A stretch of DNA of 63,253 bases, the filler included, from Intoshia linei (lineage: Eukaryota > Animalia > Orthonectida): assembly GCA_001642005.1 (NCBI GenBank). It is 3 parts of 3 records of this genome, joined end to end, with 100 filler letters (N's around TTAATTAATTAA, not from the genome) between each part and the next. Parts side by side here need not be neighbours in the genome. Positions count along the whole stretch, not along the records: positions 15,587 to 39,593 come from LWCA01000541.1; 2 more parts are not named here. One strand, written 5' to 3'. Numbering within the stretch: position 1 is the stretch's first letter; each line of letters starts with the position of its first letter. The position numbers and the translations under genes are program-made. The notes beneath the pieces were generated by a model. The model was not told the origin of the DNA, searched no databases, and saw only the letters and a list, made by a program, of their open reading frames with translations. Shown here one piece after another: positions 18,323-33,824 of the stretch.

Positions 18323-19937
18323 TCAAAGCAATATATTATCGGATATTTTAGATTGGAGAGAATTATTTTTTAAAACAAGCCGATTATTTTCAATTTTTAG
18401 GGTATTTATCTCTTGATGTAATTTTTTTATATGCATTGTTACATTACTTTTTATTTTTTCTAGACAAAAATAAAAATGATTAAAATAAAGCATACCTATA
18501 ACAGATTCAATAGTTGTATAAACGTTTTCGTTGAATATCTTGGATAAGTCAATTTCTTGATGAAAATTTGGATTATGAAAACTGTTAGTTATATTATTAT
18601 CATTATTAGAAAAAGGGTCAACCGATAAATATTTACAATCCTCTTGAGTAGAAATTGAATTATCTGTGGTTGGTTGGAGTTTAACTGGATCCGTTTCAAT
18701 TTTAACTTGAACAATGTCAATGGAACCTTTCGGTTCAATCTGTGAACCTAATTTATTCAATTCAGAGATTAGTGAAAGTGGAGGTTCTTGGGAGGTAGAT
18801 TGTACTTTTTTATTTGAATTATCTGATTCATTACAAGTTAAAGAGGTGTTACTATTAACTTGCTTTACTTTTTTAAGAATTTCAAAGTTCTTGTGTTTGT
18901 CGCCACTTTCAATTTGATCAATTGTACTGTTAATTAGTTTCAATGATGTTAAAACTGATAATGAGTTGAGTTTATTGTCCACGGTTAGGTTATTGTTATG
19001 CTTGGATTCATTCTTTATAGAATCATCTTTTTTCAACATGGATGCAGGATAATCAGAAACAGATTGTTCACTACGTTTCAATAAAAAAGCCTTAGTTTTA
19101 ATCGGACTTAATATTTTAGCAATTTTAATGTTTCTGTGTTTATCAACACTTTGAATTTCGTCAATTGTATTATTAATTAATTTTAAAGGTGTTAAAACTG
19201 ATAGTTGTTCCAGCTCATTTTTCATAATTATTTTACTGCCATGTTTGAAGTCTTTTTTATCTCTATAATCCTCTTTTTTTAAAATCTTACAATGTTTCAA
19301 CTTAAAGGGGTTAGCTGGTGATCTAAAAAATTATAATTAATCTAAAACTTAAAAGTATACGTAACGTAAGGTTCAAATTCATTAAGAGTCGTGACACATT
19401 TATCTCTGTGGTGATATCTAATATGATACGCCATGCTAGTAGCTTTAATAGCTTTGTTACAATATTGACAGGTTATAAGATTAATTTCTTTACCACAAAA
19501 TTTAACATGAGTATTTTTAAAATATTGTGGTTGCACAAAAACTTTATCGCAATTTTTACATTTGAGTCGTTTTGCAATTTTATAAACTCTATCACTGTCA
19601 ATTTCAACAAATGTATCGTTCAGCTAAATTTAAAAGTCGAAATACAATGTAGTAAAATTGATGTAAATTAAAATTTAATTATTATTAACAATATAAACCT
19701 TTTCCATATAATGGTCCACAGCCCAATGTTCAATTTCATTTCCTTGTATTTTTTTATGGCAAAGTTTGCATGTGAAAATTTTTACATCTATATTTTTATA
19801 GTCTCTTTTAATAATCTCATTTTACCTTGTTGATTAATAAATTTTTCAAGTTTTTTAGATTTTGACAATGTAAAATGACTCGACACATCGTTATGCCAAT
19901 TTTTTAGTCTTTTTTTTGATCGTTTCATTGAAATCAT
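18323..19937 (-). CDS. Zinc-finger protein with C-terminal TSC22 box/leucine zipper (~475 aa). Exons 19937-19826, 19787-19699, 19623-19361, 19322-18496, 18459-18323
   Basis: Five phase-compatible exons with GT-AG introns of 38, 75, 38 and 36 nt. Fingers: CKLC..EHWAVDH, CKNC..THVKFC, CQYC..YHIRYHH. C-terminus IESVI|EKIKSNVTMHIKKLHQEINTLKIENNRLVLKNNSLQSK aligns without gaps to the TSC box of the neighbouring gene. Confidence 0.8.
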
Positions 19938-20497
19938 TATATTTTTAACTTTATTATTTTATAACAAAATTTTTTATTGATTTCTACACAACTTACATGG
20001 AGATTTAAAAATATACACAATTTTCACTATAAAAAAAATTTACTACGCAACGTGTGTTTATAAAATATTTTTCCTTTTACAATATATACTTTTATCTAGG
20101 TTATTTACAAATTAAGTTAATACTTAACACTTAGTACCAATTTAATAAATACTTAAAAATACCAAGTATGTATAAATAATTAACGGAATCAGCACTTTAT
20201 AAACATTTCATGTGAATTTTACTAAAATTGCAAAGGATTGTAATAAATATAAAAATGATAATAATAAAGTTGTATTAATTTTAGTAATTCGTTGTTGTAA
20301 TTTTACTTTAAATTTTAAACAAAATCTTTTGAAAATGAAAATTTGAGATTAAAAAATTTCGTAGCAATAAAAATGATATAGAATCTTCTAGAATGATAAC
20401 ACAGAGACAGACAAAAAGTTATATATATAAGTTAAGGATAAATTATATGTAAAAATAATAAAACAGATAATATAAACATATAATTATAAATTATGTA

Positions 20498-23173
20498 CTA
20501 TCTTTTATCATGATCATCTATATTTTTTCGAAAATGCATATTTTTAAGATTATTAAGAGTGTCACTATCAGCCCTGGATTTGAGAAAATGGTTTTCAATT
20601 GACATTTGTTTATTATCCATTTGTAAATTGTTAATTTGATCTTTTAAACCCTTAACTTCATTAGCAATATTGTTTTTAATAATTTCTAAATTAAAATTAA
20701 TGAAAAATGTAGTAAAAACATACGCATAGTTGACTCAATAGAACTGAAATACTTTTGGGTGAAAATGGGATTATAATTTTCACTTTCGTTGAGTTTTTCA
20801 TTAATTACAGAAATATTTGGAATTTTAATATTTTTGATGGGATCAGGAATATTAGTTGATTCATCCCTTTTATTCTTTAAATCTTTTTTTATTGTAAAAT
20901 TTTGGAAAATTAAATTATTTACATCGAGTATCTTGGAACCAAAATCATAAGAATCTGGATCGGAAGGTTTAATAATTTTTTCTTCAATTTGTACAAATAT
21001 TTTATCAAATTCGGTTTTTGAAGTAGGAGAAATAATACCGTCATTTTTACATTTGGCATTTGGTTGTAAAGTTTTGATATTGGGTACTGTAGCATAGTTT
21101 GGATTTTTATATTTTTTTTCCTTTTCTGGAATTTGACTAACGCTTTCAGTTCTTTGACATTTTGTAGCTGGAGCAGCAAATTTCATTTCATTTTTGTACT
21201 TTGTAGTATCGTCTTTTTTTAAAATTTTATCTCTAGAATCTTTTTTGGTGAGATCTGGGTGTTGATTTATTTTTTCTCGTAAATGTGCATGAGTTTTTTC
21301 TTTCTTTGGTTCTTTCCTAGCTTCTTTATGAAATTCTTCCTTTTTATCTTTTTTACAGATTTGAGCTTCATTGGTTTCTTTAACAATTTTTTCCTTTTTC
21401 GAAGCATTTATTGCATTTTCCAAATCTTTGTGTACGGTTTTTACTTTTTTTAAAACTGTAATCTGGCCATCTTTTTCTCTCGTTTTTTCTTTTCTTATAA
21501 ATGATTGTATTTCAATTTCCTTAGGTGCAGTTTTATTCACTTCACCTTTAAAATTGTCATTTTCTTTCATCAATTTATCCTTTTTTAAACATGGTTGGTT
21601 ATCAGATTCTTTAAGTAATCTTTCCTTTTTGATTGTTACATTTTCACAGATGTCTTTGAAATATTTTTCTTTTTTTGTTGCATTTAAAAATCCTGCATCA
21701 CAGTCCTTTTTAAGTTTAACGTTTTTTTTGATAATTTGAATTTCAGAATCCTTACTAGCTTGTTTTTCGTTTTTAAGAGATACACAAATGTGGGCATCAA
21801 CGTCTTTAGGTTTGTCAATTTTGTTTGCATTAGAAACAAAAGATTCAGCAGATTCTTTTCGTATAATTTTAGATTTTTTCGTAATATTTAGTTGATTTTC
21901 AATTTGTTCCTTAAGAATTTTATCCTTTTTAAGTGGTAAACTAATTTGAGAATCAATACAATCTTTTTTCAAATTTTTTTTATTGATTGAAACTTGATCA
22001 ATTTTTTCCTTTTTTGGAATAAATTTTTTAACATCTGGTAAATCATTGATAGTTAATTTATCCATTTTTACGGATATGCATTTTTGAATTTCACCTTCTT
22101 TTTTTTCCTTTTTAATACAAGCTGGATTTTCCGTGATTTTTATCCTTTCTTTATCTAGTTTAAAAGAATTTTTATCTTTTTTCCCAGCGATACATACATT
22201 TTTTGTGGAATTAATTTCAGTTTTAGGAATATCAATTTTTGATCCACATTTAAAACAATCCTCTTTGGGAACTTTGTCCTTTTTAAATGTAGAACTAATA
22301 TCGTTTTGAGCATCAAACTCCTTTTTAAATTTGACTTCAGTTTTATTTTTGGTGGATAAATCCAAAAGAGTTTCTTTATGATCAATATGCATTGTTGAGT
22401 GTGCTTTAACAGTATTGATTAAAGAAGAATTAAATTTCATTGAATTTGCATAATCAACGCTAATATTTCCTGTATATAATGCATTTTTTTGTTTTTTAAT
22501 GTCTGTATTATTATTGTGAGCTTTAACCACATTTGAATCATCATAATTTCTAGAATTTAATTCATTTGTTTGACTAGAAATGGACATAATTGAAACAAAA
22601 TTGGGATTTGAAATTCCATGAGTAACATTTTGATTAGTCATATTATTAATAAATTTTTGAGAGTTATCATTAGATATTTTTCGTACAAATGTATTTACTT
22701 CAGCTGCATTGACATTTTTTTGTTTGTCTTTAACTTTATCGTTAAAATTTCTAGAAACGTCATCTCCTATATTTCCAAAACAAAAATTAAATTCTTGAGT
22801 AGGGCTATAATCCAAACAATTCCAATTTCCCCGAGTAAATTGTTTAGATTTAGTTTTAACCTTAAACCGACCTTTCTCCTTGACATCCTCATAAATAGGC
22901 ATGTCATTTGGAGATATTGGAACCATTCGAATTCGTTCATTCATCAACTGTCTTATAAAACAAATTACAGCTCCATTCAATGGATCCTTCTTAACTTTTA
23001 CAGTTTGATTTTCTTGGCTTGGAAATCTGAAACAATAATCAATAATTGCATTTAAAATAATACTTTTCGTTCAATTTATTCTTTTGTATATTCATGTTCA
23101 AATTTTCATTTTCTAAATTGCCTGAAATTGGAATAGTGTTAAATGCGTCTTCATGACTGTCAGAAATCGACAT
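20498..23173 (-). CDS. TSC22D: TSC22-domain family protein, long (bunched/TSC22D-like) form, ~866 aa. Exons 23173-23064, 23026-20724, 20685-20498
   Basis: N-terminal motif GRFKVKTKSKQFTRGNWNCLDY (compare SRFRVVK..FKKGRWTCTEFY); spliced C-terminus IESTM|QIIKNNIANEVKGLKDQINNLQMDNKQMSIENHFLKSRADSDTL is a TSC box plus leucine zipper; introns 37 and 38 nt. Confidence 0.88.
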
Positions 23174-25325: not shown

Positions 25326-26123
25326 CTATAGACCATTAGCCTACCTACATGTACATTGTACGTATGAATGAAATATTTATAATTATTGATTGTTCTTAAG
25401 AAAATATTACTAACAAATTTTAACTTTTAGAGTATTTTCCGCCCTTGAGCACTAATATAACATTAGTGTAATCGTAAAATTTATCACAGGTGTGTACATT
25501 AATGGAACAAAAAAAAGTTTCAATTGGCCCTCCAGAAATATTTACTATGAAAAATATGTCCACCCACTATGTGTATTATAAAGGTCAATATAATAATAAA
25601 ATAAACTCATGTATAATAAAAAACCGTCGCAATTCCTCTATTCTTAAATTCTTTTATATACAATGAATGTCGATAAAATTTATCTTGTATTATTTATTTG
25701 ACGTAAATAAAATACCTTCAGTACTTGTTAAAAAATTAATAAAAACTATAATTTTAAGTTTACTGCGTTTTCAACAAGTTTGTTTGTTTCTCAATGGATA
25801 AATGGCAAATTAACGCGACACAACAAATTAAAAATATTAAACTAAAATATACATCTGCCAGAAAAATAAATTCCAATAAGTATATTTAACCTAAAAATGC
25901 TACTATCACTATTATCAATCATTTAAAAAAATGGTTCCAAACTTATTACACGTGGACTCGTCATATCATATTACCTTTTAAATTAAAGTGAATTATTCCA
26001 GGTTAAATTTATTTTGTTAACATTTGTGTAAAAATTTTTTTAAAGTTGCTATGCCATTCATTTAATTTATTATACAGGTCATCAGAACGTGTGTATAATA
26101 TTAAAAATAAAGTAAATACAGTC

Positions 26124-26312
26124 CAATCCTAAAAATTGTGATAAATAGCATAAATTCCAGAAAAAATAAAATTAAGAAACCTATTTTGTCATTTTCAATG
26201 TGATGACATATATTCAGTATCAATTTAATAAATAAATCCTAAAAATTGTCATAAATAGCATAAATTCCAGAAAAAATAAAATTATAAACCTATTTTGTCA
26301 TTTTTAATGTGA
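26124..26312. repeat. Local tandem duplication (~110-bp period) of a dispersed repeat
   Basis: AATCCTAAAAATTGT..ATAAATAGCATAAATTCCAGAAAAAATAAAATTA..AAACCTATTTTGTCATTTT occurs twice; related sequence near 20160-20370, 26320-26500, 40820-40920 and 41860-41960. Confidence 0.8.
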
Positions 26313-26638
26313 TTAAAAATACCAATTATATATCAACAATTAACGGAATCAGCACTTAAAAACATATTTGAGATGAATTTTACCAATATTGCAAACCATT
26401 ATAGTAAATATAAAAATAATAATAACAAATTTGTATTACAAAGTAATTCGTTGTTGTAGTTTTAATTTAAATTTTAAAATGAGAATCAAAAATTGCGTAG
26501 CAATGAAAAAAACCCGAAAAAATCAATTATATAGATTTCCGCCCTGTAACGATTGGCAGATAAGAACTCTGATAAGTTCATCTTAAATAAAAAGATGTCC
26601 AAATTTCGATTTGAACCTAGCCACGCAGGATACAATTT

Positions 26639-32005: not shown

Positions 32006-33824
32006 TTATACAGTTTTAATTACAGCTTCATTATTTAACATTTTGAATTTTTTAACTAGAATGGCTTCATTCATTCTACTGTAAATAATTTTTTCTGTGA
32101 GAATTCCAGTTTCAGATGAATAGGCTGAAGCTTGCCATCCAATTACCAATTTTGACAATTCTCGTCCTGAAAAGGTTTTTGTCTTTTCGGCTACAATTTT
32201 ACACACGTTACCAAAATCGAAATTATCAATTTTTAACCGGTTTTTCATTTTTAAAATTGACTTTTTTTTAATACTGGGAGTAAGGATGTATTTATCAAAA
32301 TACATTCGAATAATTCGTTCTCTTTCAATTACTCCCGGTAGAGTAAATTTTATCATTTCGTCAATGCGGTCATTAATGGCCCAATCAAATTGTTCTGGTT
32401 CATTTGAGGCAAAACATAACATGATTTTTGAAGATTGTTCGCCGGTCCGGTATAAAAATGCGTTGAGGGAAGCTCTTAAATCCTCAGATATACTTCCTTG
32501 AGATCTTTTTCTAAAAAATGCATCAGCTTCATCGACAAAGAGGAGCAAACCTTTCCGACTCGTTTGAGCCCAATCAAACAGTTTGTGAATTGCGGTTACT
32601 CCTTCTCGTCCCATTGGAGCTACATCGCCACCCGTAATTATAGCGTAATCCATTCCAGAGTGGGTTGATAGTTTTTTAGCAAAAAGGGTTTTTCCTACAC
32701 CTGGTGGACCATAAAATAAAATGTTACGATACCAACCACGGTTCAATTGTGTGTTTCTGGTTGAAATAGCAATGTCTCGCAGTCGTTCTTCTATTTTTGG
32801 TGATATAATTACGCCGGATAATGGATCAATATCTTTACTTATTAATTTTTGAAAGCTTTTTAGAGGTGATTTTACCAAATCAACAATGCTAATTCTACTA
32901 GTTTGTCTAATTAAGGAGGGTTTTCCTATTCGGTTTTCGATTTTTCTAGCAATTACGCTTGTTCCGTGTTTGGCAGAATATATACCCAGTGCCATTAATG
33001 AAATACCTAGCGCAGTTGCGCTTAATTTGTCCCAATCTCTAATTAATGCATTGGCTCCGGCTCCTAGAATTAAAATATTAATGTATACCATATATTTGAA
33101 GTAAAAATTTACCAATCATTCCTCCGGCCGTTGTAATTGAATCCAAAATTGTTTTTCTTTTTTCTACTGCCTTTAACCTTATAGTCTCCATGGTAATGTC
33201 TTTATTTTCTCTTTCAATTTGTCCACGACCTCTAACTTCAGCCTCAATTCTTTTTAAATCATTTTTAAGTCGTAATTCAGCTTCATGTTCTATACTTTGT
33301 CTTCTTATAGATTCTTGTTTTTTAACAGATTCCTCTTGACGCCTCAAATTTTCCTCATTCATTCTCTTTTGTTGTGATAATTGATCATCATATCGTTTTC
33401 TAGATAATCTGTCTTGATAGTCTAGTCTAACCTGTTTTTGTTTCGTTTCTTCGCCAAAAGATTTACGACGTTCTTCCTCTGCAATACGTGATGAATCAAT
33501 TTTGTATTTTTCAAATTGTAGTTGATAATCTGCTGCTTTAGCTTCAAGTTCTTTCTAGTGACAAAATGTAGAGTATAAAACAAAATATATAATTACCTGT
33601 TTAGTTTTTTCTTGTGCTTTAATTAATTCAAAAGCTTTATTGGCGTGAGGGGATTTTTCAAGTTCTTTGGCTGATTTTGCAGCTCTTTCCAGGGCATCGC
33701 TGTCAAATTTAAATCTAGTTGAATCGTAATTGTTAGATTTTTGGTTAGATTCAACTGTCTGCCCTTCACCTTTCGGATTTGAGCCCATTATATTATCCCT
33801 TGACGATCCAAACAACCAAGACAT
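32006..33824 (-). CDS. ATAD3: ATPase family AAA domain-containing protein 3 (~575 aa). Exons 33824-33597, 33554-33113, 33063-32006
   Basis: MSWLFG start, [11 protein letters not shown], coiled coil, Walker A GPPGVGKT, Walker [19 protein letters not shown]; introns 42 and 49 nt. Confidence 0.97.

What the first reader, a model, noticed from the sequence alone, without database searches (positions are those of the whole stretch)
18323..23173. Tandem TSC22 pair in which one copy carries zinc fingers: candidate new zinc-finger/TSC-box regulator
Seen: two adjacent minus-strand genes end in ~50-aa segments that align without gaps (IFTQKYFSSIESTM|QIIKNNIANEVKGLKDQINNLQMDNKQMSIENHFLKSR vs IFNENVYTTIESVI|EKIKSNVTMHIKKLHQEINTLKIENNRLVLKNNSLQSK), each interrupted by a phase-1 intron at the same codon (38 and 36 nt). 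Both appear ~4 aa shorter than the canonical TSC box, pointing to a lineage-specific duplication. The downstream copy lacks the RFxV/GRW motif and has three zinc-finger-like motifs instead. Known: TSC22/bunched proteins dimerise through the zipper and have no classical DNA-binding domain. Inference: exon shuffling made a chimera that could heterodimerise with the parent and tether it to nucleic acid, or act as a dominant negative. I do not know this architecture from other animals.
Basis: partly seen in the sequence, partly recalled or inferred. Interest (0 to 1): 0.85.

Follow-up and report, generated by a model that had tools for sequence, protein, structure and literature searches.

The report
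Zinc-finger gene with borrowed TSC22 zipper
In the parasite Intoshia linei, an expressed gene joins three zinc fingers, copied from a finger-only gene family, to a dimerising tail that was most likely duplicated from the TSC22/bunched gene next door; this is a lineage-specific chimera, not a widespread new regulator class.

Summary
The piece is Intoshia linei contig C2254.

- **Gene A** (23173-20498, minus strand, 866 aa) is the genome's only Pfam-recognisable TSC22/bunched gene. It is a long-isoform type with an RFKV motif.
- **Gene B** (19937-18323, minus strand, 475 aa) is hypothetical protein A3Q56_04301. It has three C2H2-like fingers and a C-terminal box plus zipper.
- **Alignment.** The tail of B aligns to A without gaps over 58 aa (31% identity, E 2e-7). 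A phase-1 intron sits at the identical column in both genes.
- **Transcript.** Spliced contigs in three public runs join all five exons of B, so fingers and zipper lie on one transcript.
- **Finger paralogue (new).** The finger module has a stand-alone paralogue on contig C2716 (49% identity, all zinc ligands kept, one shared intron). This supports a chimera.
- **Caveat.** No family-level test sees B's tail as TSC22. Pfam, the ESM atlas and PDB searches return only generic coiled coils. Descent from A rests on the in-register alignment, the intron, the adjacency and the absence of a third copy.
- **Heterodimerisation** with A has only weak in-silico support.
- **Range.** No relatives of B were found outside this species.

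Verdict: a real, lineage-restricted chimeric gene of moderate interest. Its function is untested.

The parts
23064..23173 (-). Gene A exon 1 (ATG at 23173; residues 1-36 plus 2 nt)
   Evidence: the translation matches P0002 residues 1-36.
20724..23026 (-). Gene A exon 2: RFKV motif (22858-22869), NWNC motif (22816-22827), long lysine-rich low-complexity region, and the 14-aa pre-intron box IFTQKYFSSIESTM (20725-20766)
   Evidence: matches P0002 residues 38-804, with the motifs found by pattern. PMC12266122 names RFRV and RWTC as the conserved motifs of TSC22D1/2/4.
20498..20685 (-). Gene A exon 3: TSC22 leucine zipper and stop codon
   Evidence: Pfam TSC22 PF01166 at 38.5 bits (cut-off 30); 31.4 bits on full-length P0002; the best PDB chain is 1DIP, a TSC22-family zipper (E 0.1).
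20133..20373 (-). Copy of a dispersed repeat of about 240 bp between A and B. It holds the 5'UTR exon of gene B (at least 20163-20206) and its GT donor at 20162/20161.
   Evidence: 1524 first-look candidates, 40 scored at 87-91% identity; joint 19948|20163; the donor region is conserved among four aligned copies.
19826..19937 (-). Gene B exon 1 (ATG at 19937; basic KRSKKRLK N-terminus). The transcript's exon extends 5' to 19948 as UTR.
19699..19787 (-). Gene B exon 2: finger 1 (C-x2-C-x10-H-x4-H)
   Evidence: 64% identical to the paralogue on C2716, with all four ligands conserved; spliced joints on both sides.
19361..19623 (-). Gene B exon 3: finger 2 (C-x2-C-x13-H-x3-C) and finger 3 (C-x2-C-x11-H-x3-H)
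   Evidence: 47% identity to the C2716 paralogue, all ligands invariant; aligns to classical tandem C2H2 pairs (ZNF568 E 2e-5, ZNF64, ZNF217). Pfam zf-C2H2 and CEP104_ZnF score below their cut-offs.
18496..19322 (-). Gene B exon 4: low-complexity linker with an internal duplication of about 50 aa (19082-19231 and 18839-18988), ending in the pre-intron box IFNENVYTTIESVI (18497-18538)
   Evidence: local alignment score 119 between the two repeat copies; no other copy in the genome; no homologue outside I. linei.
18323..18459 (-). Gene B exon 5: leucine zipper homologous to that of gene A, and stop codon
   Evidence: 31% identity, ungapped; reciprocal and only non-self hit in the genome; joint 18459|18496 in three runs.

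Best explanation
Gene B (Intoshia linei A3Q56_04301) is a lineage-restricted chimeric gene.

Its 5' half encodes a basic, NLS-like N-terminus and three C2H2-type zinc fingers. These belong to a small Intoshia finger family that also exists as a stand-alone gene on contig C2716.

Its 3' end is a 14-aa box, a phase-1 intron and a 44-aa leucine zipper. This cassette is a diverged duplicate of the same cassette in the adjacent gene A, which is the genome's single TSC22D/bunched orthologue of the long, RFxV-bearing type.

Shown: the gene structure, the single spliced mRNA, the paralogy of the fingers, and the in-register similarity and shared intron of the tails.

Inferred: the zipper makes B a dimer, either a homodimer or a heterodimer with A. 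B lacks the RFxV/RWxC motifs through which long TSC22D proteins engage NRBP/WNK CCT domains. A heterodimer would therefore either titrate A, as short Bun and GILZ isoforms are proposed to do, or bring finger-mediated binding (probably to nucleic acid) to it.

In other animals alternative promoters put different N-termini on one shared TSC-box exon. Here a duplicated cassette does the same job in a separate gene.
For: - Structure and identity.
- Single transcript. The X1 contig of 1522 nt, the X3 contig of 1262 nt and the X2 contig of 1213 nt have zero mismatches and joints at exactly 18459|18496, 19322|19361, 19623|19699 and 19787|19826, all with GT..AG ends on the minus strand.
- Gene A is TSC22: (the only hit over the cut-off in the genome). 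RFKV motif: with PMC12266122.
- Tail homology.
- Finger paralogue with a shared phase-0 intron after HY(M/V)EK and all 12 zinc ligands conserved.
- Fingers resemble classical tandem C2H2. ESM-feature neighbours are C2H2/zf-met clusters.
- Precedent for isoforms with different N-termini on one TSC-box/zipper, and for dominant-negative short isoforms: PMC2253523.
- Heterodimer: complex prediction gave weak support, score 0.54 against a best control of 0.00. The mark was reached by 51 of 78 solved complexes and 2 of 108 mismatched pairs. At 0.60 or under it was reached by only 5 of those 78 and by all 4 mismatches that passed. The runs agree in at least 69% of contacts and the partner's pLDDT is at least 75.
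Against: - B's tail is not recognised as TSC22 by Pfam, by ESM features or by PDB sequence search. Adding B to A's profile weakens the hit to 1DIP.
- The zipper-only cross-hit is 18-19 bits (E 0.1-0.2 genome-wide). That is only slightly above what other coiled coils in the genome reach with the A+B profile (16.7 and 14.5 bits).
- Both tails are N/K/I-rich in a 25% GC genome.
- No orthologue of B is known, so there is no evidence of purifying selection on the chimera as a whole.
- The fingers have non-canonical spacing, miss every Pfam cut-off and gave a low-confidence AF2 model (pLDDT 54.8).
- The controls of the complex test were not coiled coils, so the pass may only show that two zippers pair.
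- Expression of A was not shown by the laid contigs.
Confidence: 0.7

Rival explanations
1. B's tail is an unrelated generic leucine zipper. The likeness to A is convergence of heptad pattern and AT-driven N/K/I composition, and the shared intron position is coincidence. B would then simply be a zinc-finger/coiled-coil orphan next to the TSC22 gene.
For: No family-level method sees TSC22 in B. The A+B profile prefers RasGRP1 and designed coiled coils to 1DIP. Genome-wide E-values of the cross-hit are only 0.1-0.2.
Against: Heptad-preserving shuffles reach the observed score in about 1 of 10,000. Heptad slides score 0-11 against 72. The non-zipper 14-aa box before the intron is also similar (z 4.4; 0 of 20,000 shuffles). 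The introns have the same column and the same phase, the genes share a strand and lie 2.2 kb apart, and there is no third copy in 41.6 Mb.
Confidence: 0.15
2. The chimera is real, but the fingers are protein- or ubiquitin-binding modules of the CEP104/TRAFD1/XAF1 (UBZ-like, C2HC) kind and not nucleic-acid binders. B would then be a dimeric adaptor, not a transcription-factor-like protein.
For: Both paralogues independently give their best Pfam hit to CEP104_ZnF over the same profile region (E 0.0011 and 0.00035; 19.6 and 21.2 bits). Finger 2 is C2HC. One ESM structure row names CEP104/TRAFD1/XAF1/UBZ.
Against: Both hits are below the 27.4-bit cut-off. The profile of fingers 2-3 aligns better to classical DNA-binding tandem C2H2 pairs, with a near-canonical inter-finger spacing of 30 against 28 residues. 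ESM-feature neighbours are C2H2/zf-met clusters. The N-terminus is basic and NLS-like (sequence).
Confidence: 0.2
3. B is not a partial-cassette shuffle. It is what remains of a whole-gene tandem duplicate of A, or of an ancestral bun-like locus with alternative 5' exons that was resolved into two genes. In that case its upstream part was later replaced by a captured finger gene.
For: In Drosophila and mammals several N-termini share one TSC-box/zipper exon (PMC2253523). The A-B similarity starts 14 aa before the intron, so more than the last exon was copied. The finger family exists independently.
Against: There is no detectable similarity between A and B upstream of the box (next-best segments have E 0.46 or worse). 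With 31% identity and no outgroup, the order of events cannot be read.
Confidence: 0.3

Closest known systems
TSC22D/bunched family (Pfam PF01166): long isoforms TSC22D1.1, TSC22D2, TSC22D4 and BunA
   Same: Gene A has the zipper over the Pfam cut-off, an RFKV motif where long isoforms carry RFRV, a W-x-C motif 14 residues later, a long disordered middle and a C-terminal box plus zipper.
   Different: A's TSC box appears about 4 residues shorter. Its second motif is NWNC, not RWTC. A phmmer scan of 1.8 billion representatives with its tail recovered only itself and two repeat-driven hits, so it is very diverged.
Short TSC22 isoforms without RFxV motifs (TSC22D3/GILZ, BunB/BunC)
   Same: Like them, gene B carries a TSC-type box plus zipper behind an unrelated N-terminus and lacks the NRBP/WNK-binding motifs. 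[quoted passage not shown] TSC22D3 is proposed to act through heterodimers (PMC12266122).
   Different: B is a separate gene with its own duplicated and diverged cassette, not an alternative-promoter isoform. Its N-terminus has three zinc fingers. Its tail fails the Pfam TSC22 model.
Classical tandem C2H2 zinc-finger proteins (for example ZNF568, ZNF64, ZNF217, CTCF)
   Same: Fingers 2-3 align as a tandem pair with a short linker. The ligand pattern is CxxC...H...H/C. The low-confidence AF2 model shows beta-beta-alpha elements.
   Different: The spacings are x10, x13 and x11, where the classical finger has x12. Finger 2 ends in Cys. No Pfam C2H2 model reaches its cut-off. There are only three fingers, and the first is separated from the other two.
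bZIP and other 'DNA-binding module plus zipper' factors
   Same: The logic is the same: a nucleic-acid-binding module dimerised by a leucine zipper.
   Different: There is no basic region next to the zipper. The fingers lie about 280 residues upstream, so the geometry is not bZIP-like. The resemblance is functional only.

Membership tests
TSC22/dip/bun (PF01166), gene A | Score over Pfam's gathering cut-off (30 bits) | tested here: met
   38.5 bits on the last exon alone, 31.4 bits on full-length P0002, and the only over-cut-off hit in the genome.
TSC22/dip/bun (PF01166), gene A | Long-isoform N-terminal motifs RFRV and RWTC (PMC12266122) | tested here: inconclusive
   RFKV at residue 90 fits motif A. 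NWNC at residue 104 keeps the W and C but not the R of motif B.
TSC22/dip/bun (PF01166), gene B | Score over Pfam's gathering cut-off | tested here: not met
   TSC22 is not listed at E<=10 for the last exon or for full-length P0001. The best hits are DivIC, CCDC92, ZapB and bZIP_1, all below their cut-offs.
TSC22/dip/bun (PF01166), gene B | Closer to family members than to generic coiled coils | tested here: not met
   A PDB search with B alone gives RasGRP1 and CEP135. With the A+B profile, 1DIP drops from rank 1 to rank 6. The ESM atlas gives no TSC22 cluster.
TSC22/dip/bun (PF01166), gene B | Homology of box plus zipper to a bona fide member, with shared gene structure | tested here: met
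   58-aa ungapped alignment to gene A, E 2e-7. Same intron column and phase. Shuffle tests. Reciprocal and only non-self hit in the genome.
TSC22/dip/bun (PF01166), gene B | Homo- or heterodimerisation through the zipper | tested here: inconclusive
   Complex prediction gave weak support: 0.54 against a best control of 0.00, with the tool's stated counts. There is no experiment.
Classical C2H2 zinc finger (PF00096), gene B | Cys2-His2 ligand set, conserved | tested here: met
   Three CxxC...H...H/C sets, all 12 ligands invariant between B and the C2716 paralogue.
Classical C2H2 zinc finger (PF00096), gene B | Score over Pfam's gathering cut-off (25.2 bits) | tested here: not met
   16.6 bits on exon 3 and 7.7 bits on P0001.
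Classical C2H2 zinc finger (PF00096), gene B | Beta-beta-alpha fold | tested here: inconclusive
   The AF2 model of exon 3 has strand-strand-helix at both fingers but a mean pLDDT of 54.8. No fold search was made on so weak a model.
CEP104/TRAFD1/XAF1-type ZnF (PF21039) | Score over Pfam's gathering cut-off (27.4 bits) | tested here: not met
   19.6 bits for B exon 3 and 21.2 bits for the C2716 paralogue.

The most novel reading that the evidence does not exclude
B is a functional heterodimer partner of the long TSC22D/BunA orthologue. It gives that scaffold, which has no DNA-binding domain and is linked to WNK/NRBP, a zinc-finger arm that reads nucleic acid. This would be a natural experiment, in a drastically reduced animal, in which the TSC22 zipper was recruited as the dimerisation module of a new transcription-factor type.
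Probability: 0.15. Interest if true: 0.65.

Novelty: new variant of a known kind. Interest (0 to 1): 0.42.

Why it matters
TSC22D proteins have long been called transcription factors without a clear DNA-binding domain. Recent work places them in WNK/NRBP osmosensing complexes. A natural fusion of their dimerisation cassette to zinc fingers, sitting beside the parent gene, is a clean example of gene birth by cassette duplication plus domain capture in a fast-evolving, gene-poor parasite. It also offers a testable partner for the parent protein. Its reach is limited, because it is known from one species, the tail is too diverged for family models, and no function has been measured.

Tried and rejected
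- **phmmer scan.** A's last exon against 1.84 billion representatives found only P0002 itself and two repeat-driven hits. It therefore gave no set of TSC22 relatives for a profile-profile test or an architecture census.
- **Word-indexed homologue searches.** Searches with B exon 4, with B's finger region and with the C2716 finger exon found only P0001 or nothing. These blanks are limited by query length and by word matching.
- **ESM atlas.** The finger region returns only generic C2H2/zf-met leads. The tail has no family.
- **AF2 model.** The model of fingers 2-3 from a two-row alignment has pLDDT 54.8, too weak for a fold search, so none was run.
- **Third TSC22-like candidate.** C3211 (18.6 bits) is a generic bZIP-like zipper exon on inspection and was rejected.
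- **Intergenic repeat.** Rfam finds no RNA family in it. An idea that it is a spliced-leader gene was set aside. The copies are only 87-91% alike. The part after the donor is about 30 nt. One contig reads through a copy unspliced.
- **Joined models.** No self-joined spliced model was sent to any tool. Exons were searched by reference. Full-length searches used the database proteins P0001 and P0002, which the tools returned. In scripts the exon translations were only matched as strings against those proteins.
Full report
**Source and models.** The piece (window 15587-39593) is contig C2254 of a 41.6-Mb, 3520-contig genome. It has about 25% GC and introns of 36-75 nt. A database hit identifies the organism as the orthonectid Intoshia linei. 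Gene B's product is NCBI hypothetical protein A3Q56_04301 (P0001, 475 aa). Gene A's product is P0002 (866 aa). I located splice sites by reading the minus strand. Every exon translation then sits at the expected position in P0001 or P0002.
- Gene A exons: 23173-23064, 23026-20724, 20685-20498.
- Gene B exons: 19937-19826, 19787-19699, 19623-19361, 19322-18496, 18459-18323.

Exons were searched by reference. Full-length searches used P0001 and P0002 as the tools returned them.

**The observation.** BLASTP of the two proteins gives one significant segment. A 791-848 aligns to B 417-474, 58 aa without gaps, with 31% identity, 67% positives and E 2e-7. The last intron of each gene (38 nt in A, 36 nt in B) is phase 1 and falls at the same column of this alignment, 14 residues into it.

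Because the intron fixes the register, I scored the two flanks ungapped.
- The pre-intron box scores 30 (z 4.4; 0 of 20,000 composition shuffles reach it).
- The zipper scores 72 (z 6.2).
- Shuffles that keep each residue in its heptad position still give z 4.2 (about 1 in 10,000).
- Sliding by 7 or 14 residues gives 0-11.

So the likeness is more than heptad periodicity or composition.

**Transcript.** Three public runs hold this stretch. They are not on record as RNA, but their contigs are spliced. One 1522-nt contig (X1) joins all five exons of B with zero mismatches, at exactly the predicted junctions. It adds a 5'UTR intron (19948|20163). Contigs of 1262 nt (X3) and of 1213 nt plus 150 nt (X2) agree. 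The genome holds no intron-less copy of any B exon, so these contigs come from RNA. Gene A is hardly covered by the laid contigs. The tool warns that such holes prove nothing, and the runs hold 74-78% of the stretch's words, more than B alone accounts for.

**What gene A is.**
- Its last exon alone scores 38.5 bits on Pfam TSC22 (cut-off 30). The full protein scores 31.4 bits.
- It is the only over-cut-off match in the genome.
- Its best PDB sequence match is 1DIP, a TSC22-family zipper.
- Its N-terminus has RFKV at residue 90 and NWNC at residue 104. These correspond to the RFRV and RWTC motifs through which TSC22D1/2/4 are reported to bind NRBP1/WNK CCT domains (PMC12266122).
- A borderline CCT-domain exon exists elsewhere in the genome (21.5 bits against a cut-off of 22.4).

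A is thus the long-type TSC22D/BunA orthologue, though very diverged.

**What gene B is.** No Pfam family reaches its cut-off on P0001.

Fingers:
- The N-terminus is basic (KRSKKRLK).
- Three Cys/His sets follow, with spacings x10/x4, x13/x3 (ending in Cys) and x11/x3.
- A genome search with the finger exon found a paralogue on contig C2716 (49% identity over 76 aa, E 9e-24). Its two exons encode the same three fingers, with all 12 ligands invariant and the same phase-0 intron after HY(M/V)EK. It ends shortly after finger 3, without a zipper. No third zipper copy exists in the genome.
- A profile of fingers 2-3 aligns to classical tandem C2H2 pairs in the PDB (ZNF568 E 2e-5, ZNF64, ZNF217, CTCF).
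- Both paralogues also give sub-threshold hits to CEP104_ZnF, which I keep as a rival reading.
- An AF2 model shows strand-strand-helix at both fingers but is low-confidence.

Linker: the middle 275 aa are low-complexity, unique to this gene, and contain an internal duplication of about 50 aa.

**Is B's tail TSC22?**

At family level, no.
- Pfam lists only generic coiled-coil families.
- The ESM atlas finds no TSC22 cluster.
- B alone finds RasGRP1 and CEP135 coiled coils in the PDB.
- Adding B to A's profile moves 1DIP from rank 1 to rank 6.

By descent, probably yes.
- The in-register alignment includes a non-zipper box.
- The intron position and phase are identical, and the genes lie on the same strand 2.2 kb apart.
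- Each tail is the other's only non-self hit in 41.6 Mb.

Those genome-wide E-values are only 0.1-0.2. Other coiled coils reach 14-17 bits with the A+B profile. The case therefore rests on the combination of evidence, and I put it at about 0.8. The ungapped alignment means that A and B share whatever length difference A has from the canonical box. That difference is about 4 residues if the Met before the intron is the canonical one, which I inferred and did not verify. From memory only, the canonical family has an intron at this same point. I did not verify that either.

**Mechanism.** In Drosophila and mammals, alternative promoters place different N-termini on one shared TSC-box/zipper exon. 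Short isoforms can antagonise the long one (PMC2253523). TSC22 domains mediate homo- and heterodimers (PMC12266122). In Intoshia the same outcome seems to have been reached by duplicating the cassette and attaching it to a finger gene. I infer that B dimerises through the zipper.

A test of A 780-866 with B 405-475 gave weak support: score 0.54, best of three controls 0.00.
- The mark was reached by 51 of 78 solved complexes and 2 of 108 mismatched pairs.
- At 0.60 or under it was reached by only 5 of those 78 and by all 4 mismatches that passed.
- The runs agree in at least 69% of contacts, and the partner's pLDDT is at least 75.

The controls were not coiled coils, so this says little beyond 'two zippers can pair'. 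Whether B titrates A away from NRBP/WNK-type partners, or tethers it through the fingers, is untested.

**Novelty.** No paper in the library links orthonectids with TSC22. No relative of B was found outside I. linei. These searches are limited by word matching and query length, and I could not run a domain-architecture census. I rate this a new variant of a known kind, of moderate interest. It is a clear, expressed chimera in a fast-evolving genome, with its function unmeasured.

Noticed in passing
window 20133-20373 (minus strand); other copies in L014, L015, L016: A dispersed repeat of about 240 bp, with 1524 first-look candidates in the genome and 40 scored at 87-91% identity. It lies between genes A and B and contains B's 5'UTR exon and its GT donor. 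The donor region is conserved in all four copies aligned. Upstream of 20206 the RNA contig's leader matches other copies better than the local one, which has a 2-nt deletion. The leader may therefore come from another copy, from an allele or from an assembly chimera. Several contigs per run carry the element.
   Followed up: partly
L010:1146-1387 and L010:1501-1845 (+), = G000:C2716 about 25933-26632: A stand-alone three-finger paralogue of gene B's N-terminal half, about 195 aa if it ends at the first stop. A possible AC|gt donor just before that stop would add 22 codons. The word-indexed protein search found no candidate for it at all, so it may be unannotated.
   Followed up: partly
window 20800-22700 (minus strand), gene A exon 2: About 600 aa of lysine-rich low complexity with a recurring [IL]KK[DE][KC] motif every 15-25 residues. 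Tandem Repeats Finder sees no DNA-level array.
   Followed up: no
window 18839-18988 and 19082-19231 (minus strand), gene B exon 4: An internal duplication of about 50 aa with the core LSVLT.LKLIN.TID.I.S.DKH.N (local alignment score 119). It matches no known family.
   Followed up: no
window 32006-33115 (minus strand): An open frame of 369 aa with ATAD3_N (E 7e-19) and AAA (E 1e-22) domains. It is an ATAD3-like mitochondrial AAA ATPase exon.
   Followed up: no
L020:1420-1614 (minus strand), = G000:C522:18289-18363: An exon with a CCT/OSR1_C-like motif (21.5 bits, cut-off 22.4). It suggests that a WNK/OSR1/NRBP-type partner for gene A's RFKV motif is present. No kinase exon was looked for.
   Followed up: partly
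window 18349-19948 against 20498-23173: In all three runs gene B sits in contigs of high word depth (321-963), while gene A is almost uncovered by the laid contigs. Yet the runs hold 74-78% of the words of the whole 5.1-kb stretch. Contigs for A may have been filtered out.
   Followed up: no
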